From positions 1 through 64,000 of the IMG/VR virus record IMGVR_UViG_3300012988_000016: 64,000 bases of DNA; one strand, 5' to 3'. Each line of letters opens with the position of its first letter. Position 1 is the first letter of the stretch. The translations under genes were made by a program, and so were the position numbers. Shown here one piece after another: positions 17,267-44,878 of this stretch. The notes under the pieces are model-generated. The model was not told the origin of the DNA. It saw only the letters and a program-made list of their open reading frames with translations, and did no database searches.

Positions 17267-17869
17267 ATGCTGAGGCTTACACACAACCAGACAGTTTCGG
17301 GCGCCATTCGTGTTGACGACATTGACGACGGTCTTCCCAATAAGAGCGTTCATCGTCTAGGCAGCCGAGGGGACCCGAAGGCATACAGGCGGGATGGTTA
17401 CGCCAATTCGCCCAAGCAGCCTTGTTACATCCCTCGCACCAAGATTGGGGATGCCACCATTGCTGGCTACATTGACGTGTTGGAGACCGAGAAGGTAATC
17501 CTTTCGGCCGCTTCCGGTAAGATCTCGAAATTGGTTCGAGCGGGTCTTATCACCCAAGCTACTGTCACACCAGCTAGCTTGGCCGCTCCCGTCATCACAA
17601 CCGCCACCCTCAACTCACCCTCGGCTGGTGACGTGACGGTAGTAGGTACTGGTTTGGCCTCGGTTGCTCCAGAAGTGACAACGGTCCGATTTGCTGGAAC
17701 TGGCGTTGGCAGCAAGACTTTGACATTGGCTCAAATTACTGGCGCTGGTGGTGGTTCAGCCTCCGACACCGGTATGGTGATCAAGGCGTCTTTGATTGCA
17801 GGTCTGACGACCGGCAATACGATGATCATTCGAGCTGACGCCAAAGATAGCAACACCAAAACCTTCTGA
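17267..17869 (+). CDS. Putative structural protein with a C-terminal IPT/TIG-like Ig domain
   Basis: APVITTATLNSPSAGDVTVVGTGL; paralogous to the C-terminus of 18279..19379. Confidence 0.65.
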   Translation: MLRLTHNQTVSGAIRVDDIDDGLPNKSVHRLGSRGDPKAYRRDGYANSPKQPCYIPRTKIGDATIAGYIDVLETEKVILSAASGKISKLVRAGLITQATVTPASLAAPVITTATLNSPSAGDVTVVGTGLASVAPEVTTVRFAGTGVGSKTLTLAQITGAGGGSASDTGMVIKASLIAGLTTGNTMIIRADAKDSNTKTF

Positions 17870-18278: not shown

Positions 18279-19379
18279 ATGCGTATTGGCGTAATCAGAG
18301 GGGATCTTCCAGGTCCGATTCACTTGATGGATCTGGAGCCCGTTTCTCAATTCAATCCACCAGTCGAAGCTAAGGGCCAGGAGCGGAATATCGGCCGCCC
18401 CACAACGGCCAAGTTGGACGTTGTGTTGTCCGGTTCTACCGGAGCAGGGGCGATCATCCAGGGTAGCGATATCTCTGGTTCGTTCCCGTTGACCATCAAC
18501 GGCACCAACAACGTCCTGAAGGTACGTACCACGTCCTCGGCAGCGTACAGCACAGTGACGATTGCCAACGCGGCCTACGCCAACATCACCAACCTGATTG
18601 CCGCCATCAACGCGGCCCTGTTGGGCTCTGGCGTCTCAGCTTTCACAGGTGTCGGTTCTGGTCAACGTGTGTCGTTTGAAGGTCCCAAAGGTTCTTCTGC
18701 ATACGTCGAAACCGCCACTATCGCCAACTCTGCCTACACCGCTTTGGGCTTGACGGCCACCATCCGGACCACCCCTTCTTCGGCGACCTTCATCACTGCC
18801 TTGAACCCAATTAGCGGCACTCTCAATGTGTCGAATACTGCCATCAATGCGGTGGGCTCTGGCAATAACGCAAACGCCTTGTCGTTGGTTCCCGCAGCTC
18901 GCGGCACCCAGACGGCGATTGCTGATGCGATTGCTCCGAAGTTTGCTGAGACTCCGGTGGTGATTGACAGTTGGCTGGTTGGTATGATTGCTGAATACCG
19001 TTCAGCTAGCTACAATCCAGACTCTCGTCGAGGGCTTGTCAGTGGAGCCGCAATTGCGGTTGTGGCAGATGATGGTTCAACCACCTTCACCACCACATTG
19101 CCAGTCACCAGCTCAGCCACCAAAGACAGCCCCACCTCTGGCGCTCTGACGATCGCGGGAACCGGTTTGGGTGTCTACGATCGCAAAGAGACGACCGTTC
19201 AGCTGACCGGTAAGATCAACAAGACCTTGCATCAAGTGGTGATTGAGAAGGCCGGCGGTTCCGTGACCGCTACTTCGATCGTCATCCCTGCTTCATTGCT
19301 GGCTGGTCTGACGACCGTCACCACCTTCGTTCAGGTGAAGGTTCGTCAACGTGTCTCTACCAAGCGTGCAGTAGCCTGA
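18279..19379 (+). CDS. Putative structural protein (sheath-insert-like domain plus IPT/TIG-like domain)
   Basis: Thr/Ala/Gly-rich; strong TAGGAG RBS; domain similarity to sheath repeats and to 17267..17869. Confidence 0.7.
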   Translation: MRIGVIRGDLPGPIHLMDLEPVSQFNPPVEAKGQERNIGRPTTAKLDVVLSGSTGAGAIIQGSDISGSFPLTINGTNNVLKVRTTSSAAYSTVTIANAAYANITNLIAAINAALLGSGVSAFTGVGSGQRVSFEGPKGSSAYVETATIANSAYTALGLTATIRTTPSSATFITALNPISGTLNVSNTAINAVGSGNNANALSLVPAARGTQTAIADAIAPKFAETPVVIDSWLVGMIAEYRSASYNPDSRRGLVSGAAIAVVADDGSTTFTTTLPVTSSATKDSPTSGALTIAGTGLGVYDRKETTVQLTGKINKTLHQVVIEKAGGSVTATSIVIPASLLAGLTTVTTFVQVKVRQRVSTKRAVA

Positions 19380-19755: not shown

Positions 19756-20439
19756 ATGAAAAAATGTAGTAAGTGTGGGGAAGCGAAAGAGCTGGACGAC
19801 TTCCAGAAGGACAAGAGTAAGAAGGACGGTCGATATCCAGTCTGCAAGCTCTGTCGTAGCCCTCTGACGAAGACTTCCTACGCCAAGAATCGTGAATCGG
19901 TTCGTAAGAAGGCCAAAGCCAAGTACGACGCTGATCCGGTTACCCACAGAGCCATTTCCAAGAAGTTCCGCGAAGAACATCAAGAGTACTACAAAACCTA
20001 TCTGGCCAACTACTACCAGCAGAACAAGGAACAGTGGGTTGGTTATGCGGCCAACCAAGACAAGGAAAAGGTCCGCAAGCGTCGAGCTGTCTATGTGGCG
20101 GCCAATCGTGAGAAACTGCGAGCTGGCGTTCGAGATTGGTTTCGACGGAACCGTCATGCAGCCCGTCTACAAGGGGCCAAGTACAGGATGCGTCGTTCAA
20201 AGGCTGAAAACACGCTGACTGCGATTGAGGTTGACCAAATACTAGAGGTCTTTGACCATCGTTGCGGGTATTGCCTGGTAGACCTCAGGACACTGGCTAT
20301 CGAGAAACGTACATTGGATCACTTGCAGCCCCTTATTCATGGGGGATCCAACACGGCAGACAATGTGGTTCCCTGCTGCAAGCCTTGTAACTCTCGAAAA
20401 GGGTCCCGACATATAGCTTTGATGGCACGGTACCTCTGA
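19756..20439 (+). CDS. HNH endonuclease with an N-terminal zinc finger
   Basis: CSKC...CKLC; CGYC...LDHLQP..HGGSNTADNVVPCCKPCNSRKG. Confidence 0.92.
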   Translation: MKKCSKCGEAKELDDFQKDKSKKDGRYPVCKLCRSPLTKTSYAKNRESVRKKAKAKYDADPVTHRAISKKFREEHQEYYKTYLANYYQQNKEQWVGYAANQDKEKVRKRRAVYVAANREKLRAGVRDWFRRNRHAARLQGAKYRMRRSKAENTLTAIEVDQILEVFDHRCGYCLVDLRTLAIEKRTLDHLQPLIHGGSNTADNVVPCCKPCNSRKGSRHIALMARYL

Positions 20440-20819
20440 TGAACAAGAGTGATTACCTAGCAAACCAGATACTCAACGGATGGTTGAGAGGAATCACGCC
20501 TACCCTCCCAAGTGCCCTGTATGTGGCGCTCTACACGGTAGAGCCTACGAGTGCTGGAGGTGGGGTCGAGGTGGTGGGTGGGGCGTATCAGCGTCAGACG
20601 GTTGTGTTTGGAGCACCTTCAGGGAAGATGGTGGCCAACACAGGGGCGATCAATTTCCCAACACCTACTTCTGCGTGGGGTTCGGTGGTGGCGGTAGGCA
20701 TTTTTGACGCTTTGACGGCAGGCAACATGCTGTATTTCAAGGCAGTGCAGACAACCAAGAACGTTGACACCAAACCAGTCTATTTCCCAGTCGGTTACCT
20801 GACCGTTCAAGAGCTGTGA
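20439..20819 (+). CDS. Phage tail-fibre/collar-type structural protein
   Basis: YLANQILN...LYVALYT..PT.AGGG.EV.GG.YQRQ.V.F...N..AINFP...WG.V..VGIFDA..AGNMLY is a common fibre-associated domain. Confidence 0.75.
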   Translation: MNKSDYLANQILNGWLRGITPTLPSALYVALYTVEPTSAGGGVEVVGGAYQRQTVVFGAPSGKMVANTGAINFPTPTSAWGSVVAVGIFDALTAGNMLYFKAVQTTKNVDTKPVYFPVGYLTVQEL

Positions 20820-20841: not shown

Positions 20842-21231
20842 ATGATGGCCGCTACCTTTCGTAATCGACAAGTGCAGGTGAACCGGATCACGTTCGATCA
20901 GGTCAACATCTTTCAGTCGGACCAATACAACCCCGTAACGGGTTTGATTCCGTCCAATGTCGGGCTAATCCTCACGCTCAACAATCAGACCGTATCTTGG
21001 CCGTTGGTGGATGGTACGACCGTCCAAGACAGCCAGGTGGTTTCGGGAAGCATCTATTGGAATCAGTTGACTGGTGGAGCTTACGGGATACGCTTCTATG
21101 CTAACCAGTTGGGTCATTGGAACCTGACTTTCAGCTACGCTCCTATCCCACAGCTGATTGTGATTGACTACGATGTCGTCAACCAACCGGCCGCAAGCCA
21201 AGCCTCTTTCATCAAGACTGGCTCCTGTTGA
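20842..21231 (+). CDS. Small beta-sandwich structural protein
   Basis: Beta-rich; GAYGIRF...GHWNLTFSY resembles Ig-like adaptor domains. Confidence 0.55.
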   Translation: MMAATFRNRQVQVNRITFDQVNIFQSDQYNPVTGLIPSNVGLILTLNNQTVSWPLVDGTTVQDSQVVSGSIYWNQLTGGAYGIRFYANQLGHWNLTFSYAPIPQLIVIDYDVVNQPAASQASFIKTGSC

Positions 21232-21240
21232 GAGAATCAG

Positions 21241-21852
21241 ATGACTCAGATTGATGAGGTTTTGGCTGACACTCTATCGATCTCGGCAGATGCTATCGCA
21301 CTGGCGATGGCGTATCAATTTGCCCTAGCCGATTCGGTGGGATATTCGGATCAGGTCAATGTCGAGTCCAACTTGAGTGCTGGTGCGATTGATGCAGTTT
21401 CGACCCAGGACAGTGCCCTGACTAGCAACGGTTATGAACGCAAGCCGTTCGATGGTTCCAACCTTACGGATCAAGTCTTGGTGGCGATGTTCTACGGGGT
21501 GGCTCCTTCGGATTTGATGTCCGTTGTGGATGCTATCCAATCAGGTAGAGTACAAGATGCGTTCGGTACCGATCTACTGACCCTGACTGAGACGACAGGG
21601 TTGGAATTCCAGTACAATCGTGTATCTTTGGATGGTCTGGAGACCACCGATGAGGTATACCCATGGATTGATGGTGTGCTACAAATCGCTTTTCAAGGGG
21701 ATGGTTTGCTGAGCGCTATACCAACATTCCAAGAGCCCCTACCATCCCTACAGCCCGCCATACCCCCAAAGACCAAGCAGCTTCCCAAGCTTCCCCCAGA
21801 AGAGATTCGTAGTTACATCATAGACCCACACCCTATTCGCAAACGTGAGTAG
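21241..21852 (+). CDS. Short Asp/Ser/Thr repeat structural protein
   Basis: ADTLSISAD, ADSVGYSDQ and DAVSTQDS repeats, like those of 25655..29791. Confidence 0.65.
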   Translation: MTQIDEVLADTLSISADAIALAMAYQFALADSVGYSDQVNVESNLSAGAIDAVSTQDSALTSNGYERKPFDGSNLTDQVLVAMFYGVAPSDLMSVVDAIQSGRVQDAFGTDLLTLTETTGLEFQYNRVSLDGLETTDEVYPWIDGVLQIAFQGDGLLSAIPTFQEPLPSLQPAIPPKTKQLPKLPPEEIRSYIIDPHPIRKRE

Positions 21853-21870
21853 TAGAGGACCCCAGATAAG

Positions 21871-23742
21871 ATGCAAAATGAAGATCTACACAACCTGACC
21901 GAAAAACCTCCCACTGGCCCTAGGAAGCCAGATATGATGCTCCAAGCCTCCGCTGCGGATATGGCTGAATCGAGAGCAGCTGAGAGGGCGGCCCGATCTG
22001 CCAATAGCCCTGACCTTTGGAATCGCCTGTGGGCAGAGAAGGGGGAGGAAGAGTGGCGGGTCAATGCTTTGCGGCAAGTGTACACTCGTGTCGAAAGAAT
22101 TTTGCCTGAGGGGGCTAATGTGGTAGACCTGGGCGGCGGTGTAGGTGCATTGGGACGACGCCTCCGCGATACGAAAAAAGCCAACGTCCTGGTGGTGGAT
22201 CACAGTGAAGAAGCTCTCAAGAAAGCGGCTGAAGAAGGCCTGGAAACAGCTATTGCTGACCTGGAGAACGAAGCCGATCTTCAGCGAGTCGTTACTGGCC
22301 GCGATGTAGTGGTGGCGACTGAGGTGGTGGAGCACCTGAGCGCCGCCACTCGACATCTACTGTTCAGCACAGCGGCCAAAATAGGTAAAGCGCTGCTCTC
22401 TGTTCCCAACGATCGTTTGGGACCGGACGAAGAACCGCAACACACCATCAAATACACGGCCATGTCCTTCAAACGGGACTTGCAGCAGCACTTCAACGAC
22501 GTGCGGATTGAGGTGCTGGGGCCCTATCTGTTGGGCGTATGTGGGTATCCCAAAGGTTTCACCTTGTCGGTGACGATGCCCTGCCGTGATGAGGGTGCCG
22601 ACCTGGAGGCCACTCTGGCCAGCTTCCGTGGAGTGGCGGACGAAATAGTGATTGGTATCGACCCTAGGACGGTCGACAACACCAGGGAAGTGGCTGAGAA
22701 GTACGCCGATGTGATCTTTGATCTCAAAGATCCTGAGGGACCAAAGGATGATGAGACTCCAGATGGTGGAGTCCACTTTGGTTGGATTCGCAACCAATGC
22801 ATGGACCGTTGCACTGGCCAATGGATCTTCATGACCGAGGGGCATGAGCGTCTGATCAGTGGTTGGGAAACCCTCCTCTCTCTCAATAACCTGAATCAAG
22901 CTATCAAGGTCGGATTCGTCCTCCGGACGGGTCATGATCAGCAATGGGCGTTCCCCTGGTTGTGCAAAAACCAGAAGGATATCCGATACAAGCGTAAGAC
23001 CCACAATGTTCTGGACTACCCAGATGGGTCTTATGTGGTCCAACTACCGACCATCCGAACCCTACATGATAGGGTGCATGACCGTGAGCTCTCAAGAGCC
23101 GAGCAACGAAAGACCCAGAACCGTCTGACTCTCTTGGAAGATTGGAGAGCCAACCGCAACGAGAATTCGCTGCACTACTTGGGTACTGAATGGCGGGAAT
23201 ACGACCCTGTAAGGGCCAGATCCTACATGGAGGAATACATCCGTTTGCCCAGAAAGAATGGGGCAATGCGGTATCATACTCGCCTCCAACTGGCCAAACT
23301 GTACGCCCAAGAGGCAGAAGAGGCCGCCAAGAAGGGTGAGCAGGCCAAGGTCAAGGAAATACTAGCCCAGGCTAGGGAAACCTTGATGGGTTGTTCGGGC
23401 GATGACTGGAGTCGCACTGAGCATTGGGTTTGGTTGGGGGATCTGGCCTTCAATGAAGAGAAATACGAGGAAGCCCTTCAATTCTACTTGTATGCGGGAA
23501 CTAAAGTAGGAGAGCCCCCCTTCACCCTTTGGTGGGTAGATCTGTCCTGCTACTCTTGGATGCCTTGCCAACGACTGGCGATGTGTTTTGGAGAGCTAGG
23601 GAGGCTTAAAGATTCTCTTTATTGGGCACGTAAAGTACTAGAACTGCTTCCGGATAATGCTGCTGCTTGGGCATTCGAAGAGGCGCAAGCCAACATCAAT
23701 CTGTTGGAGGAGACTATCGAGAATGTCAGACAATCTGAATGA
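21871..23742 (+). CDS. Class I SAM methyltransferase - GT2 glycosyltransferase - TPR fusion
   Basis: VVDLGGGVG, VVDHS and ATEVVEHL (methyltransferase); LSVTMPCRDE...ADEIVIGIDPRTVDNTREVA and HFGWIRN...TGQWIF (GT2); helical TPR-like C-terminus. Confidence 0.85.
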   Translation: MQNEDLHNLTEKPPTGPRKPDMMLQASAADMAESRAAERAARSANSPDLWNRLWAEKGEEEWRVNALRQVYTRVERILPEGANVVDLGGGVGALGRRLRDTKKANVLVVDHSEEALKKAAEEGLETAIADLENEADLQRVVTGRDVVVATEVVEHLSAATRHLLFSTAAKIGKALLSVPNDRLGPDEEPQHTIKYTAMSFKRDLQQHFNDVRIEVLGPYLLGVCGYPKGFTLSVTMPCRDEGADLEATLASFRGVADEIVIGIDPRTVDNTREVAEKYADVIFDLKDPEGPKDDETPDGGVHFGWIRNQCMDRCTGQWIFMTEGHERLISGWETLLSLNNLNQAIKVGFVLRTGHDQQWAFPWLCKNQKDIRYKRKTHNVLDYPDGSYVVQLPTIRTLHDRVHDRELSRAEQRKTQNRLTLLEDWRANRNENSLHYLGTEWREYDPVRARSYMEEYIRLPRKNGAMRYHTRLQLAKLYAQEAEEAAKKGEQAKVKEILAQARETLMGCSGDDWSRTEHWVWLGDLAFNEEKYEEALQFYLYAGTKVGEPPFTLWWVDLSCYSWMPCQRLAMCFGELGRLKDSLYWARKVLELLPDNAAAWAFEEAQANINLLEETIENVRQSE

Positions 23743-24205
23743 CGAACTGAACGCCTCGGGCGTATACATCATCGAAGTGATTCGTGACGGTAAGACTGGC
23801 CCTGAGGTGTTGGAACGGCGCGTTGTTCCGAATCTCGTGGTCAACACCGGCAAGCGCCAGATTTGGCGTATGAGCACGGGTCTCAACACGCACTCATTCA
23901 CCAGGATGCGTATCGGCACCTCTGGTGTGGCTGCCTCTTCCGCTCAAACCAATCTCATCACCCCTGTGACCGGCACTTTGGCGGCCGCTGCCGTCACTCT
24001 GTTGAGCGGCACCCGCACCATGCAGTGGATCGTCTCGTACGCTTCTGGTGCTGGTACCAAGTCGGCCACCAACATCCGTGAAGTAGTTGTGATGAACTCG
24101 CCCACCAGCCCTGGTGGTTCGGCCTTGTCTCGTTCGACGTTCACAGCCGTCAACAAGACCACGGCGGATAAACTACGTATCACCTACCGCGCCCGTGTGA
24201 CCTGA
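23723..24205 (+). CDS. Phage fibre/collar-type structural protein
   Basis: NLVVNTG...MRIGTSG.AASSAQTNL pattern; true start probably ATG 23723, overlapping the glycosyltransferase stop. Confidence 0.7.
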   Translation: MSDNLNDELNASGVYIIEVIRDGKTGPEVLERRVVPNLVVNTGKRQIWRMSTGLNTHSFTRMRIGTSGVAASSAQTNLITPVTGTLAAAAVTLLSGTRTMQWIVSYASGAGTKSATNIREVVVMNSPTSPGGSALSRSTFTAVNKTTADKLRITYRARVT

Positions 24206-24245
24206 TTCTTCTACGACTTGACAACATATCGGAAGTTGTCAAAAA

Positions 24246-24291
24246 GAAATGCCGTACTCGATGCTTTTGCTTCGGTACGGCATTTCTGTTT
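24246..24291. terminator. Probable bidirectional terminator
   Basis: GAAATGCCGTAC (24246-24257) / GTACGGCATTTC (24275-24286), a perfect 12-bp stem flanked by A and T tracts. Confidence 0.75.
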
Positions 24292-24437
24292 AAAGGGGTA
24301 TTGTCTGTTCCAATGAGATGACTAACTACTTAGCCTTCTTATTAGCGCACCTTTGTGAGGCGATCTAATCAGACAGTCTCCAACCCATAAGAACCCTTAT
24401 TGGGCGTTCTAGGTTGCCCCCTACAAGGAGTTTTGAG

Positions 24438-25298
24438 ATGCTCTGGACGCCCAAAGGATTGACTGGATACGGTTGGAGTTTCTCTTCTACGGGTAGTACT
24501 CGTATTGCCGCCTCCTGGGGCACTTCTGTGACTCCTGGCAATAATACGATGGGGTCGTATGCCCAGGTTTTGACTTCCGGCAACGTATCGAAGGATGTTT
24601 TCGGACTTCAGATCCAATTTAGCTCAAATGCTGTTTCTACAGCCGCTAGGGATACGATTTGTGACATAGGTATTGATGCCGCTGGCGGTACCTCGTACAC
24701 GGTTCTCATTCCGTCCTTGTTAGCTTCCAGTGCAGCTCCTTCATTGGGAGCAACTGGTTCTGGCCTGAACTACTTCTTCCCACTTTACATCAAAGCTGGG
24801 TCTACGGTCGCTGTCCGAGCGTCGGTCAACAATGCAACAGTCGGAACCCTTCGATGCGGTATTCGGGTATACGGGGCTCCTAGAGACCGTAGAAACGTCT
24901 TGGTAGGTTCCAAAGTTATTGCCTACGGGATCAGTACCGGTAGCTCGACAGGTACCGCAGTGACTCCAGGAACAACCTCCGAGGGCACTTGGACTTCGTT
25001 GGGGACCATTGCTTCTGGAGACAATCCGTGGTTTTGGCAATATGGTGTAGGTATAAATCAAGGCACCATTACAGCTGTGGCCTATACGGGGGATCTGGGA
25101 ATCGGGGACGCTTCGAATAAGGTCATAGTCGGAGAAGATAGGGTCTGGCAAGGCACTACAACCGAACAGTGGTACGACAACGGTATCGCTGTGGGAAGCC
25201 TCTACCAAGCCAAAGCAGGGGATATTGTGTACGGGCGCCTCCAATGTAGTGGTACCGCAGTGTCTGGTATCTCAATGGGCGCCTATGGAGTGAAATGA
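24438..25298 (+). CDS. Putative fibre/receptor-binding-associated structural protein
   Basis: Gly/Ser/Thr beta-rich with two internally similar halves; AAGGAG RBS places the start at ATG 24438. Confidence 0.65.
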   Translation: MLWTPKGLTGYGWSFSSTGSTRIAASWGTSVTPGNNTMGSYAQVLTSGNVSKDVFGLQIQFSSNAVSTAARDTICDIGIDAAGGTSYTVLIPSLLASSAAPSLGATGSGLNYFFPLYIKAGSTVAVRASVNNATVGTLRCGIRVYGAPRDRRNVLVGSKVIAYGISTGSSTGTAVTPGTTSEGTWTSLGTIASGDNPWFWQYGVGINQGTITAVAYTGDLGIGDASNKVIVGEDRVWQGTTTEQWYDNGIAVGSLYQAKAGDIVYGRLQCSGTAVSGISMGAYGVK

Positions 25299-25301
25299 AC
25301 A

Positions 25302-25655
25302 ATGGCCTTAAATAATGCTCTTTACTCTCAATCTGCTCAGACGATCTCTTCTACTGAGTACAGCCTAACCGCCAACTCTACCTCTTTAGCTACGGTCACA
25401 ACTGTAGCAGTGATATCTGTGTGGATCGATGTCAATGCTTTAGCAGCTGGTGATGAATTTGAACTAGCTATACTTGAAAAGGCTGTAAGCGGCGGCACCC
25501 AGAGAAGAATGGTCATTGCCACTTTGGTGGGGGCTCAAGCTGACCCCCTGTTCGTCACAGCAGGGTGGCAGGTGGGAGTAGGTTGGGACGTCACTCTGAA
25601 GAAGATTGCTGGAACTGACCGCGCCTTTTCTTGGACAATACGATCGATTAGCTAA
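25302..25655 (+). CDS. Small beta-rich structural protein
   Basis: Coupled to both neighbours. Confidence 0.65.
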   Translation: MALNNALYSQSAQTISSTEYSLTANSTSLATVTTVAVISVWIDVNALAAGDEFELAILEKAVSGGTQRRMVIATLVGAQADPLFVTAGWQVGVGWDVTLKKIAGTDRAFSWTIRSIS

Positions 25656-28600
25656 TGTCTTGGAGTTTTGGTTTCGTACTATTCGGCGAGGGTGTTTTAC
25701 CTAGCACCATCGATGTAGTTACGTCTACTGATTCCATAGCTGTCACCGATATTGGGTTCAACCCATATCTCCAACTCAGCGACACAGTAGCGGTCACCAG
25801 CTCAGCCGTCATCGAATTCTTCGACGGCAACGTGATCGCGATCACTGATTCGAGCGTCGCTGATTTTCCAACCACCTCAGCGATAGATCGATCCGCCAGC
25901 GACACCGTTGCAGTAACCGATTCCGCTACTCTTCAAAACGTATTCGATCGTTCTTCGAGCGATACGTTGGTAGTCACTGAAGACGTGGTCTGGGACCTGT
26001 ACTTCAATGTTGACAGTATTTCAACCTCTGATTCTACTCTAAGAAGCCTTGAGTACAACAGGAGTGTTTCGGATACCGTCTCAGTCACAGATTCTGAGAG
26101 CAATCAGGTCGACAAGACCCTTTCGGATTCGGTCACACTCACCGATTCCACTGTAGCTTCTCGTGAGTATTCGATCCTCTTAGGAGATACCGTCTCGGTC
26201 ACAGATGCTGAGAGTAATCTGGTCGACAAGGGGGTGTCAGATTCGATCGCTCTGACGGATTCGATCACGGTCACTCTAGGTACCCTCATCGACATTTCGT
26301 TGTCGACCGACACGATTGCCACTACTGATGCGGCCAACACCTCCATGGTGTTCAATGTGTCGGCGAACGACACTGTGAGTACGACGGACTCAACTGTCGT
26401 CGAGTTCATCATTAGTGTGATTGATCGATCGGGCAACGATTCGATCGCTGTCACTGACAGCATCTTTGAAGAGCGCTTCCTAGAGGTAGCTGCTTCAGAC
26501 ACCGCATCGATCACCGACTCTATTGTTGTCTCGGCTACGTACGAACGAGCGTCTAACGATACGGTCGCCACCACCAGCTCAGCTGTTCTTGAGTTCTATG
26601 ACGGCAACCAGGTCACAATCACTGATTCCAGTGTTGCTGATTTCCCCGTTACTGGTGTGATTGATCGATCGGCCAGCGATTCGATCTCTATTACCGACTC
26701 GGCGACTCTGCAGAACGTGTTCGAACGTCTGCCGAGTGACACGATTGTGGTCGCTGAAGACCTCGTTTGGGACCTGTATAGGCCTGCAGACACCATCACG
26801 TTGACTGATGCGAATACTCTAAGTGTAGAATACGGCAGAAGTGTTTCGGATACTGTCTCGGTCACAGACGCTGAGAGTAATCAGGTAGATAAGGGAGTAT
26901 CGGATTCGATCGCTCTCACCGATTCTGCTGCCCTGTCAATCGAATACGGTCGAACCGGATCGGATTCTATTGCTGTCAGCGATCAAATCCAAAGAGAGAC
27001 ATCGTTCCCTCAGGACAGCGTATCAGTATCGGATACTGCCGTCATCAGTTTGGAGTACTCTCGTTCTGCCAACGATACTCTAACGGTCACAGACAATGTG
27101 TCGATCGGCCAGACGATCGACACCGCACTATCTACCGATAGTGCGGCCCTGACTGACTCGACCTTGCTGTCTATCGAATACGGCAGACTGGTCTCCGACA
27201 CAATCAGCACTTCTGATTCGATCTTGGTATCGGCAGAATTCGGCCGTCTGCTGTCCGACACTTGCTCGATTGCAGAACAGACTTTCATAGAGAAGACGTT
27301 CCCACAGGACAGCGTTACTGTCACCGATTCGACGATTGTTGGCTCAGAGTATAGTGTCATAGGATCGGATGCCATTGTCCTGTCGGATTCGATTCAGACT
27401 AGTTCTCAGTTTGATAGGACAATCCAAGATTCAATCGTCACGTCTGACTTCGCATTCCCTGAAATTGAGTCCGCTCTAACGGATGTCATCTCGATCCTGG
27501 ACACTTCTGCTACCAGCATCGAGTACGGGGTCAGCACGTCTGATTCGATCCTTATTACAGATCAGACTCTTAGAGAGAAAACGTTCCCTCAAGACACAGT
27601 TTCAGTCACAGATCAGACCACCCTGTCTTCCGTCTACAGCCTGACGGCTTCTGACGCATTGTCGATTATCGATGATGTCTCGGCTACTACCAGCCAATCG
27701 ATAGACCTGTTCCTAAATGACAGTATTACGGTCACTGATCTGACCAGCACCTCATCCGAATACGCCAAGAGTTTGTCGGATACGTTGGCGGCTACGGACC
27801 AAGGCAGCACAGAGGTTACGTTCAACCGCACCCTCACAGATTCAATCCTAACTTCAGAGCAACTGCTCGTAGAAAAGACGTTCATTTCGGACGTGGTGAC
27901 GCTCGTCGACAGTCAGAGCACGAGCCTTGAGATTGGGGTGCTGGCTAGCGACACGATCCAAGTATCGGATCAGACCCTTAGGGAGAAAACCTTCCCCCAA
28001 GATGCGATTCTCGTCTCTGATTCGTTGGTCCTGTCTTCTCAATACCAGAGGTATTTGGCCGATACTCTCCAGATCCTGGATGACGTCTCAGCCACAGCTA
28101 GCCAGGCGACGGACCTATTCTTTAACGACTCGATCGTTGTCACAGATCAGACGCTCCTTTCGTCCGTCTACTCTCTGACAATATCTGATTCGCTGGCCAT
28201 TTTGGACTCGACTGTTGTTGATGTTCAATCTACCAGCTCAGACACGATCAGTGTCTCAGATGCTGTAACGGCCGGTCTAGAGAAGGCCCTGGCTCTTTCA
28301 GATTCTGTGACGACCGCTGACAGTTTCCTGTTGGGGTTTGAGTACGGTAGAAATCCGATCGATTCGATAGTTTTGGCGGATCAGACGATCCCAAGCATTG
28401 ATAAAGATCGTTCGGCTTCCGACACAATCAGCACCTCTGACTCCTTCTTGCGTAGTTTGGAGTACGGCCGCCTACTGTCGGATTCGATTTCCCTCACCGA
28501 CTCCTCCATTGTTGATCTGTTCCAAGGCTTGTCGGTATTCGTTGCCGATTCCGCAGTCATCACGGATCAACTGATCCCGTCTACTGACTACATCCGCTTG

Positions 28601-29791
28601 ACTGCGGATGCGGTAACCCTATCGGATTCTCCCCTTGTATCTCTGTTTTCTGAAAAGGCCGCCTCTGATACGATTCAGGCCACAGATCAAAATACACTCT
28701 CGCTAGAGTTCGGCCGATTCCTGGTTGATTCAGTGACAGTGTCCGAGCAGTTGGTTCCAGACACCAGCTATGTTCGCCCTGTTTCTGATGCGATCGTTGT
28801 TTCAGACCAGAGCTCAATCTCCTCGGTCTACGAAAAGACGATTCTGGACACAATCTTCGTTGTGGATAGCCGTGCCGTAAGTTTGGACCAGAACCGGTCA
28901 AACAATGACGTCATCAGCTGTCTGGACCAGTGCACCCTGGCGTCTGAATACGTCAAAGTACTTCAAGACAGCATCCAGCTAGCTGAACAGCTGATCCCGT
29001 CTACCGACTACATCCGAAGCATCGCTACGGATTTGATCGACACCACTGAGCAGTTGATCGTTGAGAATGAGCGGGGGACAGTTGTTGAAGACGCCCCCAT
29101 CAGCGTCTCTGACGCGCTGTTGGCCGAAACTTCGTACCGTAGGTCAGCTTTTGACGCCTTGGACATCTCTGAGGTCTTGCTAGCGGAGACCCAGTACGTC
29201 AGAGACACTCAGCCGGACTCTATCAGCTGTCTGGATGGAGCTGAGGCTGCTATCGAGACCTTCCTTAACTTTTTGGATGACCTTGAGGTTTCGGATCAGA
29301 TCGTCATCTTCACCGAATCCAATTTCTCAATCGTCGAAGATGATGGGATTACGGTGTTCGACGACACGATCGTCAGAATCCTTAACAATGGGGTCGGTCC
29401 CAGCATCTCGGCGGATACTAACGCTGTCAAACGCTTCCGGTACATGCAGCAACTTCAGCGTGGGGACCTCTGTATCAGGACTTCAGATGCGACGGGTCCG
29501 TATGGGCCGGCGGCGGTCTATTACCGGCTCTACCAGATTTCTAAGTCTGGGGCCCCTATGATGGTAGGAGGGCGTCAGAAAGCTGTCAATGGGGCTGTAG
29601 GGGAGTTCTACGTCATAGGTTTGGCGGGTGAACACGGTCAACCAGGCGAATGGTTGATCAGATGGGAAATCCAAGATTCGGCTCAATCACCTATCCAGAC
29701 GGTGGACCAACGATTCCTGGTTTTGGATGCTTTGGCGTTGAATCCCAATGGGGGTTTTCCGCCTAGAGTCAACAAGTATGGTTGGGAATGA
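25655..29791 (+). CDS. Giant Ser/Thr/Asp-rich repeat protein (putative fibre/whisker) with a C-terminal Ig-like domain
   Basis: Dozens of SDTxSxTDS-type repeats; globular C-terminal region of about 100 aa similar to the N-terminus of 29830..30720. Confidence 0.8.
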   Translation: MSWSFGFVLFGEGVLPSTIDVVTSTDSIAVTDIGFNPYLQLSDTVAVTSSAVIEFFDGNVIAITDSSVADFPTTSAIDRSASDTVAVTDSATLQNVFDRSSSDTLVVTEDVVWDLYFNVDSISTSDSTLRSLEYNRSVSDTVSVTDSESNQVDKTLSDSVTLTDSTVASREYSILLGDTVSVTDAESNLVDKGVSDSIALTDSITVTLGTLIDISLSTDTIATTDAANTSMVFNVSANDTVSTTDSTVVEFIISVIDRSGNDSIAVTDSIFEERFLEVAASDTASITDSIVVSATYERASNDTVATTSSAVLEFYDGNQVTITDSSVADFPVTGVIDRSASDSISITDSATLQNVFERLPSDTIVVAEDLVWDLYRPADTITLTDANTLSVEYGRSVSDTVSVTDAESNQVDKGVSDSIALTDSAALSIEYGRTGSDSIAVSDQIQRETSFPQDSVSVSDTAVISLEYSRSANDTLTVTDNVSIGQTIDTALSTDSAALTDSTLLSIEYGRLVSDTISTSDSILVSAEFGRLLSDTCSIAEQTFIEKTFPQDSVTVTDSTIVGSEYSVIGSDAIVLSDSIQTSSQFDRTIQDSIVTSDFAFPEIESALTDVISILDTSATSIEYGVSTSDSILITDQTLREKTFPQDTVSVTDQTTLSSVYSLTASDALSIIDDVSATTSQSIDLFLNDSITVTDLTSTSSEYAKSLSDTLAATDQGSTEVTFNRTLTDSILTSEQLLVEKTFISDVVTLVDSQSTSLEIGVLASDTIQVSDQTLREKTFPQDAILVSDSLVLSSQYQRYLADTLQILDDVSATASQATDLFFNDSIVVTDQTLLSSVYSLTISDSLAILDSTVVDVQSTSSDTISVSDAVTAGLEKALALSDSVTTADSFLLGFEYGRNPIDSIVLADQTIPSIDKDRSASDTISTSDSFLRSLEYGRLLSDSISLTDSSIVDLFQGLSVFVADSAVITDQLIPSTDYIRLTADAVTLSDSPLVSLFSEKAASDTIQATDQNTLSLEFGRFLVDSVTVSEQLVPDTSYVRPVSDAIVVSDQSSISSVYEKTILDTIFVVDSRAVSLDQNRSNNDVISCLDQCTLASEYVKVLQDSIQLAEQLIPSTDYIRSIATDLIDTTEQLIVENERGTVVEDAPISVSDALLAETSYRRSAFDALDISEVLLAETQYVRDTQPDSISCLDGAEAAIETFLNFLDDLEVSDQIVIFTESNFSIVEDDGITVFDDTIVRILNNGVGPSISADTNAVKRFRYMQQLQRGDLCIRTSDATGPYGPAAVYYRLYQISKSGAPMMVGGRQKAVNGAVGEFYVIGLAGEHGQPGEWLIRWEIQDSAQSPIQTVDQRFLVLDALALNPNGGFPPRVNKYGWE
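25778..26926 (+). repeat. Internal 372-nt (124-aa) duplication: 25778-26149 and 26555-26926
   Basis: DTVAVTSSAVIEFFDGN...NQVDKTLSDSVTLTDS vs DTVATTSSAVLEFYDGN...NQVDKGVSDSIALTDS. Confidence 0.9.
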
Positions 29792-29829: not shown

Positions 29830-30720
29830 ATGTCGGTAGCATTTTACAAGGGTCAGCAATTGGGTTCCAAGGACCTTGACATTTGCCTAGCAAATGCGTC
29901 GGACTACCCTATCAATGCGGCTGAAATATCCTACGCTCTATACGACCTGACCACTGGCAAAGAAGTGTTGCTGGGAGTACCCCGCAGAGATCCGGCCAAC
30001 GATTCGGTCGGACATTACTATGCCAGTATCGTGATCCCCAAAGACGCTCGTATCGGAGATTACCGAATTCGCTGGGTATTCAGGGAAGTGGCGGGGGGTA
30101 AGATTCATCAGGTGGTGCAAGAATTCAACGTCATCGACGGGGCGGCCGGACCGATGGTGATCGTCCCCTGTTCAGAGATCGCGTTGGTGAGGAGTCTTCG
30201 GATCCTTCTCAGGGACAACAACCCTGACCGAAATTACCACTTTCGACCGCCTGCCCATGAGGAGACGATCACTCAGTTAAATCGAGTGTTCGGCTACATT
30301 TGGGAAGATGAGGAACTGGCTGAATACTTGCTCCGCTCTCTCGACATGGTGTCGGCTGCCCCTCCCCGTACCCCCATTCCTTCTTTTGACGCCCTGTTTC
30401 GAGACTACCCTGACTGGCGAACCTTGGTGATCAATGGGGCGATGATGTACGCCTTGCGGGCAGTTGCGATCAATTGGGTGGCAGATGAGTTTGGCTACAG
30501 TATTGGAGGAATCTCTCTAGATCTGGAGAAATCGTCCAAATACCAACAACTCTCCCAGGATGTCAAAGACTCCTTTGACAGCCAACTTGAGAAAGCTAAG
30601 GCGACGGTCAAGATCATCAAAGGTTTGCAGCAGCCCCGATACGGGATCGGTATTCGGAGCTCGTTTGGGCCGTATGTGGGATCAGGTGTGTTGAGCCCAC
30701 GAAAGTTCGTCGGATTCTGA
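29830..30720 (+). CDS. Head-tail adaptor (neck) protein with an N-terminal Ig-like domain
   Basis: RSLRILLRD...IWEDEELAEYL...YSIGGISLD resembles the SPP1 gp15/HK97 gp6-type adaptor pattern. Confidence 0.65.
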   Translation: MSVAFYKGQQLGSKDLDICLANASDYPINAAEISYALYDLTTGKEVLLGVPRRDPANDSVGHYYASIVIPKDARIGDYRIRWVFREVAGGKIHQVVQEFNVIDGAAGPMVIVPCSEIALVRSLRILLRDNNPDRNYHFRPPAHEETITQLNRVFGYIWEDEELAEYLLRSLDMVSAAPPRTPIPSFDALFRDYPDWRTLVINGAMMYALRAVAINWVADEFGYSIGGISLDLEKSSKYQQLSQDVKDSFDSQLEKAKATVKIIKGLQQPRYGIGIRSSFGPYVGSGVLSPRKFVGF

Positions 30721-44600: not shown

Positions 44601-44878
44601 TCGTCAAACCAGGGGAAGAACCACCACCTCCAGAGGAAGTGGAGCAAAAGTTGGAAGACGAGCGTCGTCTGGCTTACGTGGCGATCACGAGGGCAGCGAA
44701 GAACTTGACGATCGTCTGCCCCAGTAGTGTGGGTGGCAAGGCAGGCGGAGTTAGCGAATTCGTGTACGAGGCCGGCCTCAACTTGGGTCAAAATATCAAG
44801 CCGGCAGAGCCTAATGAAAAGCAAGCTTTCGACGTAAGCAATGTTGATTGGCAACCTCATGATGGGATGGATGCCTGA
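41687..44878 (+). CDS. uvrD: UvrD/PcrA-like SF1 helicase with an N-terminal extension of about 270 aa
   Basis: AGAGSGKT, HIIVDEAQD, VGDDKQAINSFQGA, TNYRC, HSTKG and ERRLAYVAITRA motifs. Confidence 0.93.
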   Translation: MERWAETSEDELIGEFQVAEYLIFLFALDTYLRYSEETTGQDQLEGDTIRKGVTILRLADHSLDSIKSYLDNHLPSPTHKMMLNRAINISISTANGVARRALQFRTLLSRGGPSTMKGIFDTTKYIRQVREAISASMLEDADRALDIFAALPMRNTRMRAWIDLAAKVAGSGEAAPSAVDAGSREAGETSTELVIHQVQQIAASGADESLKSQEAQAELLDTVEREATNAARRSLEINSQSDEPPTRSEVVGVAVAAATAAMSDPSKPQNIPTPLRRLDDEQRAAALTDGKVRVAAGAGSGKTSTVVARVEYLIKERRVLPSRILVTSFNNKASEELKERLGKAVGGESLQQMSVGTMHSLFKRFIGEYGTNAEKVTMGQLKNGPNGFIGDGKKIGYAVQNIWEDCYGKQKPIPKLQSVLLLKAQWAGNHVTPLEAAAKARSSSERDAALWYEMYEGLKGSIPGWKPVCHSKSYESFMTKVRPNNIPLGDFSDMLSTFLKILKREPRVQITIQKMYDHIIVDEAQDRNSVMKEVLDLCAGHVTDGSDGKSYWVVGDDKQAINSFQGARSELFINMGEEDGWKTRSIRTNYRCEPELVDAANKLIAHNKGQIEMESVPNPQKVRGSGSIQVVTPMDEAGAALGVVEGIKQNLVLGANVTDHAVLTRTNKELHAYETACIIRGVPYARKGASSFLGSPETTALLGYVQLVTGSDFTKMQKALGNAINKPRRFFLTDPKKAPEAVEAALSAYARQRDVDVKSINPMTALQDRSFVRHLVDALAKLTRSGKAFKFEEKIEDLAQSLQEMKALTTDPDYTTKNLFDDILGLKGTGIVGGAFVEQSFRESLQADLKNSTSADDDEAVDEDDEEDSTQGLGNISFLYQLALPDPTDEDDELNPPTTPMGFKQKMERYASKMKDLRTDITKWYKEQSALPPEKRSPPPGVYLGTCHSTKGAQWPTVFVAMPAGKFPMVPIVKPGEEPPPPEEVEQKLEDERRLAYVAITRAAKNLTIVCPSSVGGKAGGVSEFVYEAGLNLGQNIKPAEPNEKQAFDVSNVDWQPHDGMDA

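What the first reader, a model, noticed from the sequence alone, without database searches (positions are those of the whole stretch)
21241..29791. Probable virion glycosylation and methylation system: MTase-GT2-TPR fusion next to Ser/Thr-rich fibre proteins
Seen: a single polypeptide fuses a SAM methyltransferase, a GT2 domain and TPRs. It is translationally coupled to a fibre-type gene (23723) and lies between two Ser/Thr/Asp repeat proteins (21241 and the 1378-aa 25655). Known: GT2-TPR enzymes (SunS type and flagellin glycosyltransferases) glycosylate proteins, and some mycobacteriophages glycosylate their virions. Inference: this phage decorates long fibres with O-linked, possibly methyl-capped glycans for shielding, adhesion or host mimicry. 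The one-chain methyltransferase fusion appears unusual.
Basis: partly seen in the sequence, partly recalled or inferred. Interest (0 to 1): 0.76.

Follow-up and report, generated by a model that had tools for sequence, protein, structure and literature searches.

The report
Phage fibre-modifying glycosyltransferase–methyltransferase fusion enzyme
An uncultured soil phage, like hundreds of its relatives, encodes one enzyme that joins a methyltransferase to a protein-type sugar-adding domain, always overlapping a small neck-fibre gene, so these phages probably put methylated sugars on their own fibres, though nobody has tested this.

Summary
Gene 21871-23742 encodes a 623-aa soluble protein with three domains, all conserved: a class I SAM methyltransferase, a GT2 domain and a C-terminal helical-repeat (TPR) domain. 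Its AlphaFold model has pLDDT 90. The GT2-TPR part is homologous to enzymes that glycosylate proteins or peptides: GmaR (flagellin O-GlcNAc transferase, E 4e-11) and SunS/ThuS (Foldseek E 4e-13).

The enzyme's end overlaps a 160-aa gene (p160, start 23723). This pairing is kept in 34 of 35 full-length loci, down to 30-34% enzyme identity. p160 has the fold of phage whisker and chain-fibre 'bead' proteins (GP4 gp80, Bas63/Sf14 whiskers).

The 1378-aa neighbour consists of about 60 tandem 20-residue repeats plus a C-terminal domain related to the head-tail adaptor. It is frequent near the enzyme (22 of 28 loci) but dispensable. It may be a 'rope' that carries beads rather than a mucin-like acceptor.

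Best reading: a late, cytoplasmic enzyme glycosylates neck-fibre proteins with a host nucleotide-sugar and probably methylates that sugar; p160 is the prime acceptor. This is inference only. The family is common in metagenomes but absent from cultured phages and cellular genomes. I rate it a new variant of a known kind.

The parts
20439..20819 (+). Gp80-like chain-fibre monomer (126 aa)
   Evidence: Pfam PF23140 Gp80 E 2.5e-34. phmmer to GP4 gp80, PDB 8jou_a, E 3.7e-8.
20842..21231 (+). p129, an unknown 129-aa protein conserved together with the Gp80-like gene
   Evidence: Found after the Gp80-like or DUF5659-like gene in 5 loci. No family hit.
21241..21852 (+). p203, a short member of the 20-residue-repeat family (about 7 weak units); candidate short 'rope' or fibre shaft
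   Evidence: HMM iteration merges it with the REP1378 family. Repeat-unit HMM gives 7 domains, E 0.023. Its orthologue L002_182 gives 6 units, E 3e-5.
21871..23742 (+). ENZ: 623-aa fusion of an N-terminal helical region, class I SAM methyltransferase (aa ~61-225), GT2 domain (aa ~226-400) and helical-repeat/TPR domain (aa ~401-623)
   Evidence: Pfam. PDB profile hits to GmaR E 3.8e-11 and SunS E 8e-5. AF2 pLDDT 90.4. Foldseek to ThuS/SunS E 4e-13. Invariant GGGxG 88-92, E151/E154/H155, E323-G-H325, H378 and H399.
23706..23712 (+). Shine-Dalgarno-like GGAGGAG inside the ENZ coding sequence, 10 nt before the p160 start codon
   Evidence: Read directly from the sequence.
23723..24205 (+). p160: 160-aa whisker/fibre-bead-fold protein that overlaps the end of ENZ by 20 nt; prime candidate acceptor or partner
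   Evidence: phrog_5417 E 1.6e-11. AF2 pLDDT 86. VIA Z 11.2 to an HFTV1 tail chain, 7.5 to GP4 gp80, 5.2-5.5 to Sf14/Bas63 whiskers. Follows ENZ in 34 of 35 loci and in 4 further contexts.
24414..25298 (+). p294, unknown function, S+T 22%
   Evidence: Homologue found in only one other genome (L022). No family hit.
25302..25655 (+). p117, a small jelly-roll beta-sandwich protein (F5/8-type-C/CUB-like)
   Evidence: ESM Atlas model pTM 0.84, TM 0.61-0.63 to F5_F8_type_C/MAM/CUB clusters, with Bbp16 as a lead.
25655..29791 (+). REP1378: about 60 tandem 20-residue repeats (aa ~24-1254, consensus x-S-D-[ST]-I-x-V-[TS]-D-[SQ]-x3-S-x-E-[YF]-G-R-x) plus a C-terminal beta domain (aa ~1265-1361)
   Evidence: 54 units by motif scan and 60 by unit HMM; lag-20 autocorrelation. 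The C-terminal domain is 30% identical (E 6e-9) to the N-terminal domain of p296. Family members range from 182 to 1636 aa, all with 20/40-residue periodicity.
29830..30720 (+). p296, probable head-tail adaptor relative; its N-terminal domain is a paralogue of the REP1378 C-terminal domain
   Evidence: The corresponding gene after the repeat protein in L089 (366 aa; p296 relatives of 366-367 aa) hits phrog_442 head-tail adaptor E 5e-6 and is followed by a Neck1 protein (phrog_222, E 2e-16). Domain match.

Best explanation
ENZ is a soluble, late-expressed, bifunctional enzyme that modifies the phage's own neck-fibre proteins inside the infected cell.

Proposed mechanism:
- The C-terminal helical-repeat (TPR) domain binds the acceptor protein. 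GmaR binds flagellin this way and SunS/ThuS bind their peptide substrates this way.
- The GT2 domain transfers a sugar from a host nucleotide-sugar to Ser/Thr side chains. It uses an unusual, family-invariant E-x-H motif in place of DxD.
- The fused class I SAM methyltransferase then methylates the product, most likely a hydroxyl of the added sugar.

The prime acceptor is p160. This small whisker/bead-fold protein has its gene overlapping the enzyme's stop codon, and it has three conserved Ser/Thr/Gly/Pro-rich loops. p160 probably assembles on the 20-residue-repeat protein REP1378, which is anchored at the neck by its adaptor-like C-terminal domain. The result would be a long bead-on-rope fibre.

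Shown here: the domain identities, homology to protein glycosyltransferases, conservation of catalytic-type residues, the strict ENZ-p160 gene pairing, the fibre-type fold of p160, the repeat architecture, and the head/neck genomic position.

Inferred, not shown: that any glycan is added, its linkage, the donor, the target of methylation, the acceptor identity and the bead-on-rope assembly.
For: Enzyme type:
- A profile of 36 homologues hits GmaR at E 3.8e-11 over the GT domain and SunS at E 8e-5.
- The AF2 model (pLDDT 90.4) aligns over about 410 columns to ThuS/SunS, E 4e-13.
- In the GmaR alignment, GmaR's D-A-D aligns with ENZ's invariant E323-G-H325. H378 and H399 align with GmaR histidines.

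Methyltransferase:
- Methyltransf_23 scores over its cut-off and GGGxG is invariant.
- The nearest structures are small-molecule, sugar and ribose O- or C-methyltransferases (Hen1, UbiG, MtmC, AtmM, CouO), not DNA methyltransferases.

Solubility and conservation:
- No transmembrane segment (maximum KD19 hydropathy 1.07), and all three domains are conserved.

Pairing with p160:
- p160 lies directly downstream in 34 of 35 full-length loci, including the 34%-identity L038 with a 29-nt overlap.
- The same is seen in three further contigs chosen from the p160 side, and in L090, where a 30%-identity ENZ relative overlaps a p160 relative by 23 nt.
- More distant members of the p160 superfamily lack ENZ upstream.
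- By BLASTP, ENZ and p160 are far more widely conserved than the surrounding virion genes: 35 and 25 loci against about 5.

p160 fold: whisker/Fiber-I/baseplate-fibre type.

Genomic position: between a capsid-like protein and the head-tail adaptor and Neck1 genes in L089.

Donor: the 309-kb record has only this one GT2. It has no GT1/GT4-type (PF00534) or second GT2-like (PF13641) glycosyltransferase, no epimerase and no nucleotidyltransferase. A host donor and a short glycan are therefore the simplest reading.

Independent parallels:
- A ~970-aa GT4-MTase-GT2 fusion lies one to two genes after the major head protein in another phage lineage.
- A GT2-TPR-GT4 fusion plus two GT2 genes lie between head and tail genes in a temperate siphophage.
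- PBCV-1 A064R builds and methyl-caps the capsid glycan (PMC9614988).
- Mycobacteriophage capsid and tail-tube glycosylation, as cited in PMC12619734.
Against: - There is no biochemical, proteomic or transcript evidence. No RNA run was found to hold the sequence in a search of all run kinds, which was not a dedicated RNA search, and the phage is uncultured.
- The canonical DxD is absent. E-x-H is only presumed to bind metal.
- TPR Pfam matches are below their cut-offs.
- Gene adjacency does not identify the acceptor. A TPR protein encoded next to a fibre gene could instead be an assembly chaperone.
- One locus (L024) has ENZ without p160 within 10 kb.
- p160 shows no sequence similarity to Gp80 by hhalign, and its structural Z of 7.5 is in the range the tool calls 'middling'.
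- The bead-on-rope idea rests on analogy: 20-residue periodicity also occurs in the GP4 protein next to gp80, but that protein is not in the PDB, so I could not confirm it is the published rope.
Confidence: 0.5

Rival explanations
1. The enzyme O-glycosylates the long Ser/Thr/Asp repeat proteins (REP1378 and p203), coating long fibres with methyl-capped glycans. p160 is only a co-expressed fibre component. This rival is not exclusive of the best explanation, since both proteins could be acceptors.
For: - REP1378 is 26.6% Ser+Thr, with Ser/Thr favoured at five positions of each 20-residue unit.
- In the whole 309-kb genome, repeat proteins of this family occur only beside ENZ.
- They lie within 10 kb of ENZ in 22 of 28 loci with enough flank, and in L087 and L089.
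Against: - The association is not obligatory. Six of 28 loci lack a detectable family member, and L088 has a Laminin_G_3 protein there instead. p160, by contrast, is almost invariant.
- The Ser/Thr residues alternate with Ile/Val in a regular beta-strand pattern, with invariant Asp at both strand ends. This is typical of a structural repeat, not of disordered mucin-like acceptor tracts.
- Repeat number varies from about 8 to about 80 while ENZ stays constant.
Confidence: 0.22
2. ENZ is mainly an assembly factor or stable partner of p160. The TPR domain would chaperone or dock the fibre protein. The catalytic domains would act on something other than the virion, such as a small molecule or a host envelope glycan, to block superinfection or change the host surface.
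For: - TPR domains commonly mediate protein-protein binding.
- GmaR itself has a second, non-catalytic role as an anti-repressor (PMC9638930).
- The overlapping genes suggest coupled synthesis.
- Some PHROG relatives of the GT part are annotated as host-takeover glycosyltransferases.
Against: - There is no transmembrane segment and no lipid-carrier-type GT2 features. Seroconversion enzymes are normally membrane-bound and encoded in lysogeny regions, not between capsid and neck genes.
- The closest homologues and structures are protein or peptide glycosyltransferases.
- Catalytic-type residues are invariant in both enzyme domains.
Confidence: 0.15
3. ENZ modifies phage DNA, by base glycosylation plus methylation, to evade host restriction.
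For: Phage glycosyltransferases and methyltransferases are classically DNA-modifying, a point made in PMC12619734.
Against: - The GT is a GT-A/GT2 with a TPR domain of the SunS/GmaR type.
- The MTase matches Methyltransf_23/25/12 and small-molecule or sugar methyltransferases. No DNA methyltransferase family appeared among the matches.
- The gene sits in the head/neck module and is locked to a fibre gene.
Confidence: 0.05

Closest known systems
GmaR of Listeria monocytogenes (flagellin O-GlcNAc transferase; GT2 + TPR)
   Same: It is the best sequence match to the GT domain (E 3.8e-11 over about 190 residues). It has an N-terminal GT2 followed by helical repeats. The conserved His residues align. 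It modifies Ser/Thr of a surface filament protein in the cytoplasm (PMC9638930, PMC3150276).
   Different: GmaR has a canonical D-x-D where ENZ has E-x-H. GmaR has no methyltransferase domain. It is bacterial and doubles as a transcription anti-repressor. Identity to ENZ is low.
SunS / ThuS glycocin S-glycosyltransferases (SunS is encoded by prophage SPbeta)
   Same: They are the best structural matches to the GT2 plus helical-repeat region (Foldseek E 4e-13, about 410 aligned columns). From my own knowledge, not tested here: the acceptor is a gene-neighbour polypeptide recognised by the helical domain.
   Different: From my own knowledge: they glycosylate Cys (and some Ser/Thr) of small secreted bacteriocins. 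p160 has no conserved Cys. They have no methyltransferase and no link to virion genes.
Chlorovirus PBCV-1 A064R (GT-GT-methyltransferase)
   Same: It is a single viral polypeptide that combines glycosyltransferase and SAM methyltransferase activities. It builds the terminal sugars of the capsid-protein glycan and methylates the last one at O-2 (PMC9614988). This is the direct functional precedent for 'methyl-capped' virion glycans.
   Different: It comes from a eukaryotic giant virus. Its domain order is GT-GT-MTase, it has no TPR domain, and it extends an N-linked glycan rather than initiating on protein. Sequence relationship to ENZ was not tested.
Mycobacteriophage virion glycosylation (Che8/Corndog/Myrna type)
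   Same: Phage-encoded glycosyltransferases decorate the phage's own structural proteins (as cited in PMC12619734 and PMC11256854).
   Different: The acceptors there are the C-termini of capsid and tail-tube subunits. Actinobacteriophage genes have separate GTs. ENZ has no homologue in 50,697 cultured phage records.
Bead-on-rope chain fibres and whiskers (GP4 Fiber-I gp80 with its rope; A1002 gp40/gp41 on nozzle-rope gp39; Bas63/Sf14 collar-whisker)
   Same: The window encodes a true Gp80 homologue and p160 has the same fold class. REP1378 has an N-terminal repeat tract and a C-terminal globular anchoring domain, like the Bas63 collar with its rope extension. The rope length per bead is about 20-24 residues in A1002 (about 270 residues for 11 dimers, PMC13730344). 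The GP4 protein next to gp80 has a 20-residue period.
   Different: No enzyme is associated with any described chain fibre. REP1378 would carry up to about 60 bead sites, against 4-22 monomers in known examples. There is no sequence similarity between REP1378 and known ropes. Assembly is untested.

Membership tests
Glycosyltransferase family 2 (GT-A fold, Pfam PF00535) | Match to the family profile above the curated cut-off | tested here: met
   24.0 bits against a cut-off of 23.3. 26.4 bits in the genome scan. The margin is narrow.
Glycosyltransferase family 2 (GT-A fold, Pfam PF00535) | GT-A Rossmann-like fold | tested here: met
   AF2 model pLDDT 90.4. Foldseek matches to the ThuS/SunS GT-A domains with probability 1.00.
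Glycosyltransferase family 2 (GT-A fold, Pfam PF00535) | Canonical DxD metal/nucleotide-sugar motif | tested here: not met
   The position that aligns with GmaR's D-A-D is E323-G-H325, invariant in 36 sequences. It is a conserved variant. From my own knowledge, it resembles the D-x-H of polypeptide GalNAc-transferases.
SunS/ThuS/GmaR-type protein or peptide glycosyltransferases (GT2 + C-terminal helical repeats) | GT2 domain followed by a TPR-like helical-repeat domain in one chain | tested here: met
   Helices at 403-622 in the model. About 410-column structural alignment to full-length ThuS/SunS.
SunS/ThuS/GmaR-type protein or peptide glycosyltransferases (GT2 + C-terminal helical repeats) | Detectable sequence homology to characterised members | tested here: met
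   GmaR E 3.8e-11 and SunS E 8e-5 with the family profile.
SunS/ThuS/GmaR-type protein or peptide glycosyltransferases (GT2 + C-terminal helical repeats) | The acceptor is a polypeptide | not testable with these tools
   Only genomic linkage to p160 is available.
Class I SAM-dependent methyltransferase | Profile match above cut-off, a GxGxG SAM-binding loop and a Rossmann fold | tested here: met
   Methyltransf_23 32.1 bits against 27. G88-G89-G90-x-G92 is invariant. Foldseek probability 1.00 to many SAM/SAH-bound methyltransferases.
Class I SAM-dependent methyltransferase | Identity of the methyl acceptor (sugar hydroxyl, protein side chain or other) | not testable with these tools
   The nearest structures span sugar, ribose, quinol and small-molecule methyltransferases and do not discriminate.
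Phage virion glycosylation systems (mycobacteriophage type) | Phage-encoded GT located among virion structural genes | tested here: met
   In L089, ENZ lies between a capsid-like protein (phrog_1623) and the adaptor and Neck1 genes. In the window it lies beside Gp80-like and fibre genes.
Phage virion glycosylation systems (mycobacteriophage type) | Glycans demonstrated on virion proteins | not testable with these tools
   The phage is uncultured and no proteomic data exist. The source is soil metagenomes.
Gp80 / Fiber-I / whisker fold family (for p160) | Match to Pfam PF23140 or sequence homology to gp80 | tested here: not met
   No Pfam hit. hhalign probability below 1% against the window's own Gp80 homologue.
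Gp80 / Fiber-I / whisker fold family (for p160) | Shared three-dimensional fold | tested here: met
   VIA Z 7.5 to 8jou_a (115 residues), Z 5.2-5.5 to the Sf14/Bas63 whiskers, Z 11.2 to an HFTV1 tail chain. In the ESM Atlas, the model of the top feature hit (not of p160 itself) has TM 0.87 and 0.82 to clusters carrying PF23140 and PF12571.
'Rope' proteins of chain-like fibres (for REP1378 and p203) | Periodic docking segments of about 20-24 residues, encoded next to the bead gene | tested here: inconclusive
   The 20-residue period is present and family-wide. The GP4 neighbour of gp80 has the same period, but I could not confirm it is the published rope.
'Rope' proteins of chain-like fibres (for REP1378 and p203) | Beta-sheet augmentation with bead dimers | not testable with these tools

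The most novel reading that the evidence does not exclude
A large clade of uncultured phages builds neck fibres of an unprecedented size on the bead-on-rope plan. The rope would have up to about 60-80 docking repeats, carrying p160 beads. Each bead would be enzymatically glycosylated and then methylated by a dedicated three-domain enzyme whose gene overlaps the bead gene. This would be the first fibre-specific post-translational glycosylation system in phages outside the actinobacteriophages. It would use a GT2 with an E-x-H metal motif, and a methylated O-glycan as a virion surface coat.
Probability: 0.2. Interest if true: 0.8.

Novelty: new variant of a known kind. Interest (0 to 1): 0.6.

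Why it matters
Glycosylation of a phage's own virion has so far been shown only in some mycobacteriophages and, among viruses generally, in giant algal viruses.

Here a single, highly conserved enzyme is locked to a fibre gene. The enzyme family counts at least 280 clusters at 90% identity in metagenomes, on contigs from 28 kb to 450 kb. If it works as inferred, virion glycosylation is widespread among environmental phages, and a compact two-gene module (enzyme plus acceptor) can be tested directly in E. coli.

It would also give a new protein O-glycosyltransferase/methyltransferase pair with a non-canonical metal motif. It could show how surface glycans on fibres affect adsorption, stability or recognition.

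Separately, the 20-residue-repeat proteins extend the recently described 'chain-like fibre' architecture to much longer forms, if the rope reading is right.

Tried and rejected
- Nucleotide and protein searches of 50,697 cultured phage records with the region, ENZ and p160 found nothing. No annotated relative exists.
- A scan of 185,579 species-representative prokaryote genomes for the family's signature motifs gave only two weak partial GT2 matches. ENZ is therefore not a prophage or cellular gene there, and no flagellar or S-layer context could be used.
- PHROG and Pfam scans of most neighbouring genes gave no hits.
- Sequence-profile searches of p160 against PDB and Pfam gave nothing. hhalign of p160 against the window's Gp80 homologue and p129 gave nothing. 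Only structure comparison placed p160.
- I tried to identify GP4's rope protein through PDB sequence searches. The 326-aa and 568-aa GP4 proteins are not in the PDB, and only gp77 and gp80 are. The rope analogy therefore stays unconfirmed.
- The REP1378 C-terminal domain and p117 show no similarity to GP4 gp77. The ESM Atlas lead to PF23148 Gp77 (score 0.70) was not substantiated.
- Promoter and terminator scans were no better than shuffled sequence.
- No RNA run was found to hold the sequence in a search of all run kinds, so I gave up on expression evidence and did not lay reads.
- Cluster look-ups returned no names or accessions.
- The 'moraphage' paper (PMC12619734) mentions core glycosyltransferases, but nothing ties that lineage to this one.


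Full report
**Setting.** The window is the first 64 kb of a 308,895-bp IMG/VR virus record. The sequence comes from soil metagenomes. Nearly all genes are on the + strand. Recognisable genes include a head maturation protease (2750-4297), a helicase (41687-44878) and a baseplate hub/lysozyme relative (59416-61593). Most other proteins have no PHROG or Pfam hit, so this is a very divergent phage.

**The enzyme (ENZ, 21871-23742, 623 aa).**
- Pfam gives Methyltransf_23 (aa 65-187) and Glycos_transf_2 (aa 233-324), both above their cut-offs. TPR_1/2 match only below cut-off.
- A search of 5.8 billion proteins returned 280 homologues. The best 120 are all full length at 49-80% identity, on contigs up to 404 kb. 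IMG/VR loci reach 452 kb.
- In an alignment of 36 homologues, all three domains are conserved: mean identity 57% (MTase), 65% (GT2) and 54% (helical/TPR). Invariant residues include GGGxG (88-92), T150-E151-x-x-E154-H155, the R182-L-G-P185...E188...H191 block, D264/D269, F-M-x-E323-x-H325-E326, H378-N379 and H399.
- There is no hydrophobic segment, so the protein is cytoplasmic.
- The AF2 model is confident (pLDDT 90.4, pTM 0.85).
- A family profile hits the solved structure of GmaR, the Listeria flagellin O-GlcNAc transferase, at E 3.8e-11, and SunS at E 8e-5. Foldseek ranks ThuS and SunS first (E about 4e-13, about 410 aligned columns spanning GT2 and the helical domain).
- In the GmaR alignment, the D-A-D motif aligns with E323-G-H325, and two GmaR histidines align with H378 and H399. 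ENZ therefore belongs to the protein/peptide-glycosylating GT2-TPR group but carries a fixed E-x-H variant of DxD.
- The methyltransferase domain's nearest structures are small-molecule, sugar and ribose methyltransferases (Hen1, UbiG, MtmC, AtmM, CouO and others). No DNA methyltransferase family appeared among the matches.

**The partner (p160, 23723-24205).**
- Its ATG lies 20 nt inside ENZ, preceded by GGAGGAG.
- tblastn and an HMM find a p160 orthologue immediately after ENZ in 34 of 35 loci that hold a full-length ENZ. This includes L038, where ENZ is only 34% identical and the genes still overlap. Only L024 lacks it.
- Starting from the p160 side, three further long contigs all have ENZ directly upstream. 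A more distant p160 relative (E 1e-23) still follows a 30%-identity ENZ relative with a 23-nt overlap.
- Still more distant superfamily members (E 1e-12 to 1e-14) follow unrelated small genes.
- The p160 superfamily is large: 1,060 representative clusters at E ≤ 0.001, of which only 18 at E ≤ 1e-30. The ENZ-linked form is a distinct, tight subfamily.
- By BLASTP, ENZ (35 loci) and p160 (25 loci, median 60% identity) are far better conserved than the surrounding virion genes (about 5 loci).
- p160 has no Pfam or PDB sequence match. Its model (pLDDT 86) matches phage fibre and whisker proteins: an HFTV1 tail chain (Z 11.2), A511 gp105 (7.6), GP4 Fiber-I gp80 (7.5), phi812 and phiKZ baseplate-periphery proteins (6-6.9), and the Sf14 and Bas63 whiskers (5.2-5.5). 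The ESM Atlas agrees.
- Three loops of the model are rich in conserved Ser/Thr/Gly/Pro: aa 66-89, 107-114 and 125-133. S108 and T128 are invariant.

**The repeat proteins.**
- REP1378 (25655-29791) has 54 units by motif scan and 60 by unit HMM. Most are exactly 20 residues, with consensus x-S-D-[ST]-I-x-V-[TS]-D-[SQ]-x3-S-x-E-[YF]-G-R-x.
- Relatives range from 182 to 1636 aa, and essentially all show 20/40-residue periodicity.
- p203 (21241-21852) is a short, weak member of the family.
- In the 309-kb genome the repeat HMM finds only these two genes.
- A family member lies within 10 kb of ENZ in 22 of 28 loci with enough flank. Some loci have other proteins there instead, for example a Laminin_G_3 protein in L088.
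[quoted passage not shown] The corresponding 366-aa gene in L089 hits the head-tail adaptor family and is followed by a Neck1 protein.
- In L089 the gene order is: MuF-like protein, S78 protease, scaffold-like protein, capsid-like protein (phrog_1623, E 2e-74), four small genes, ENZ, p160, a 1410-aa repeat protein, adaptor, Neck1. The module therefore sits at the head-neck boundary.

**A different reading of the repeats.**
- The window also encodes a true homologue of GP4 gp80 (20439-20819; PF23140 E 2.5e-34; 8jou_a E 3.7e-8).
- Published structures show that gp80-type proteins form dimers threaded on a 'rope'. [quoted passage not shown]
- The GP4 protein encoded next to gp80 has ten 20-residue repeats, and entry 8JOU holds ten gp80 chains. 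I could not confirm that this protein is the published rope.
- REP1378 has a long periodic tract plus a neck-type anchoring domain, and it lies downstream of a bead-fold gene. It may therefore be a giant rope, with p203 as a short one for the Gp80 homologue. This is analogy, not demonstration.

**Function.**
- The genome has no other GT2, no GT1/GT4-type (PF00534) glycosyltransferase, no epimerase and no nucleotidyltransferase. A short glycan from a host nucleotide-sugar is the simplest expectation.
- The fused methyltransferase most plausibly methylates that sugar. PBCV-1 A064R does exactly this on the capsid glycan (PMC9614988).
- Two other phage lineages place multi-domain glycosyltransferases in the same kind of position. 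One has a ~970-aa GT4-MTase-GT2 fusion one or two genes after the major head protein (phrog_1005, E 2e-58). The other has a GT2-TPR-GT4 fusion with two more GT2 genes between head and tail genes.
- I therefore favour virion-protein glycosylation plus methylation, with p160 as the main acceptor (confidence about 0.5).

**Novelty.**
- The family is absent from cultured phages and from 185,579 species-representative genomes.
- My searches found no paper describing this fusion or a fibre-linked glycosylation enzyme.
- Virion glycosylation, GT-MTase fusions and GT2-TPR protein glycosyltransferases are each known. This is a new variant of a known kind: a three-domain enzyme locked to a fibre-bead gene.
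- Nothing here is experimentally shown.

Noticed in passing
window 19756-20439: An HNH endonuclease ORF (227 aa; PF14279/PF01844; phrog_1035 endonuclease VII) sits between the DUF5659-like gene and the Gp80-like gene in this genome only. Relatives L004, L010 and L011 lack it. It is likely a homing-endonuclease insertion inside the fibre gene cluster.
   Followed up: partly
window 17267-17869 and 18279-19379: The 200-aa and 366-aa proteins are paralogues: each retrieves the other's family by HMM iteration. Neither has a family hit apart from a weak SpaA/prealbumin-like lead in the longer one.
   Followed up: partly
window 29447-29737 and 29854-30147: [quoted passage not shown] This suggests both dock at the same neck site.
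   Followed up: yes
window 25302-25655: p117 is a confident small jelly-roll (ESM Atlas pTM 0.84) resembling F5/8-type-C, CUB and MAM carbohydrate- or ligand-binding modules. Small ORFs of about 105-119 aa follow p160 in many relatives, but their homology to p117 was not established.
   Followed up: partly
L084 2206-3183 (Ralstonia phage GP4, MH638294.1 57947-58924): The 326-aa virion-associated protein encoded next to Fiber-I gp80 has about ten 20-residue repeats (lag-20 autocorrelation 0.21). That number matches the ten gp80 chains in PDB 8JOU. The protein itself is not in the PDB.
   Followed up: partly
L052 7099-10023 (also L046, L048, L051, L066, L070): A separate lineage of smaller phages encodes a ~970-aa GT4-methyltransferase-GT2 fusion one to two genes downstream of the major head protein, after the protease and scaffold/cement genes.
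   Followed up: partly
L042 9995-14248: A temperate siphophage (integrase, ParB) carries a 672-aa GT2-TPR-GT4 fusion followed by two GtrB-like GT2 genes. They lie between the MuF-like head protein and the tape measure gene.
   Followed up: no
window 41687-44878: A 1063-aa DNA helicase (phrog_1967, E 3e-86) lies between the virion genes on either side (head/neck genes upstream, baseplate hub at 59416-61593). The structural region is therefore interrupted by replication genes.
   Followed up: no
window 24206-24413: A 209-nt stretch with no ORF of 60 aa or more on the + strand separates p160 from the next ORF, which begins with TTG. It is the largest such + strand gap in the cluster and was not examined for a small ORF or RNA.
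   Followed up: no
own genome G000:C1:77198-83026 (outside the window): A 1942-aa ORF gives 17 very weak matches to the 20-residue repeat HMM (E 0.61). This is not significant, but it is the only other candidate in the genome.
   Followed up: no
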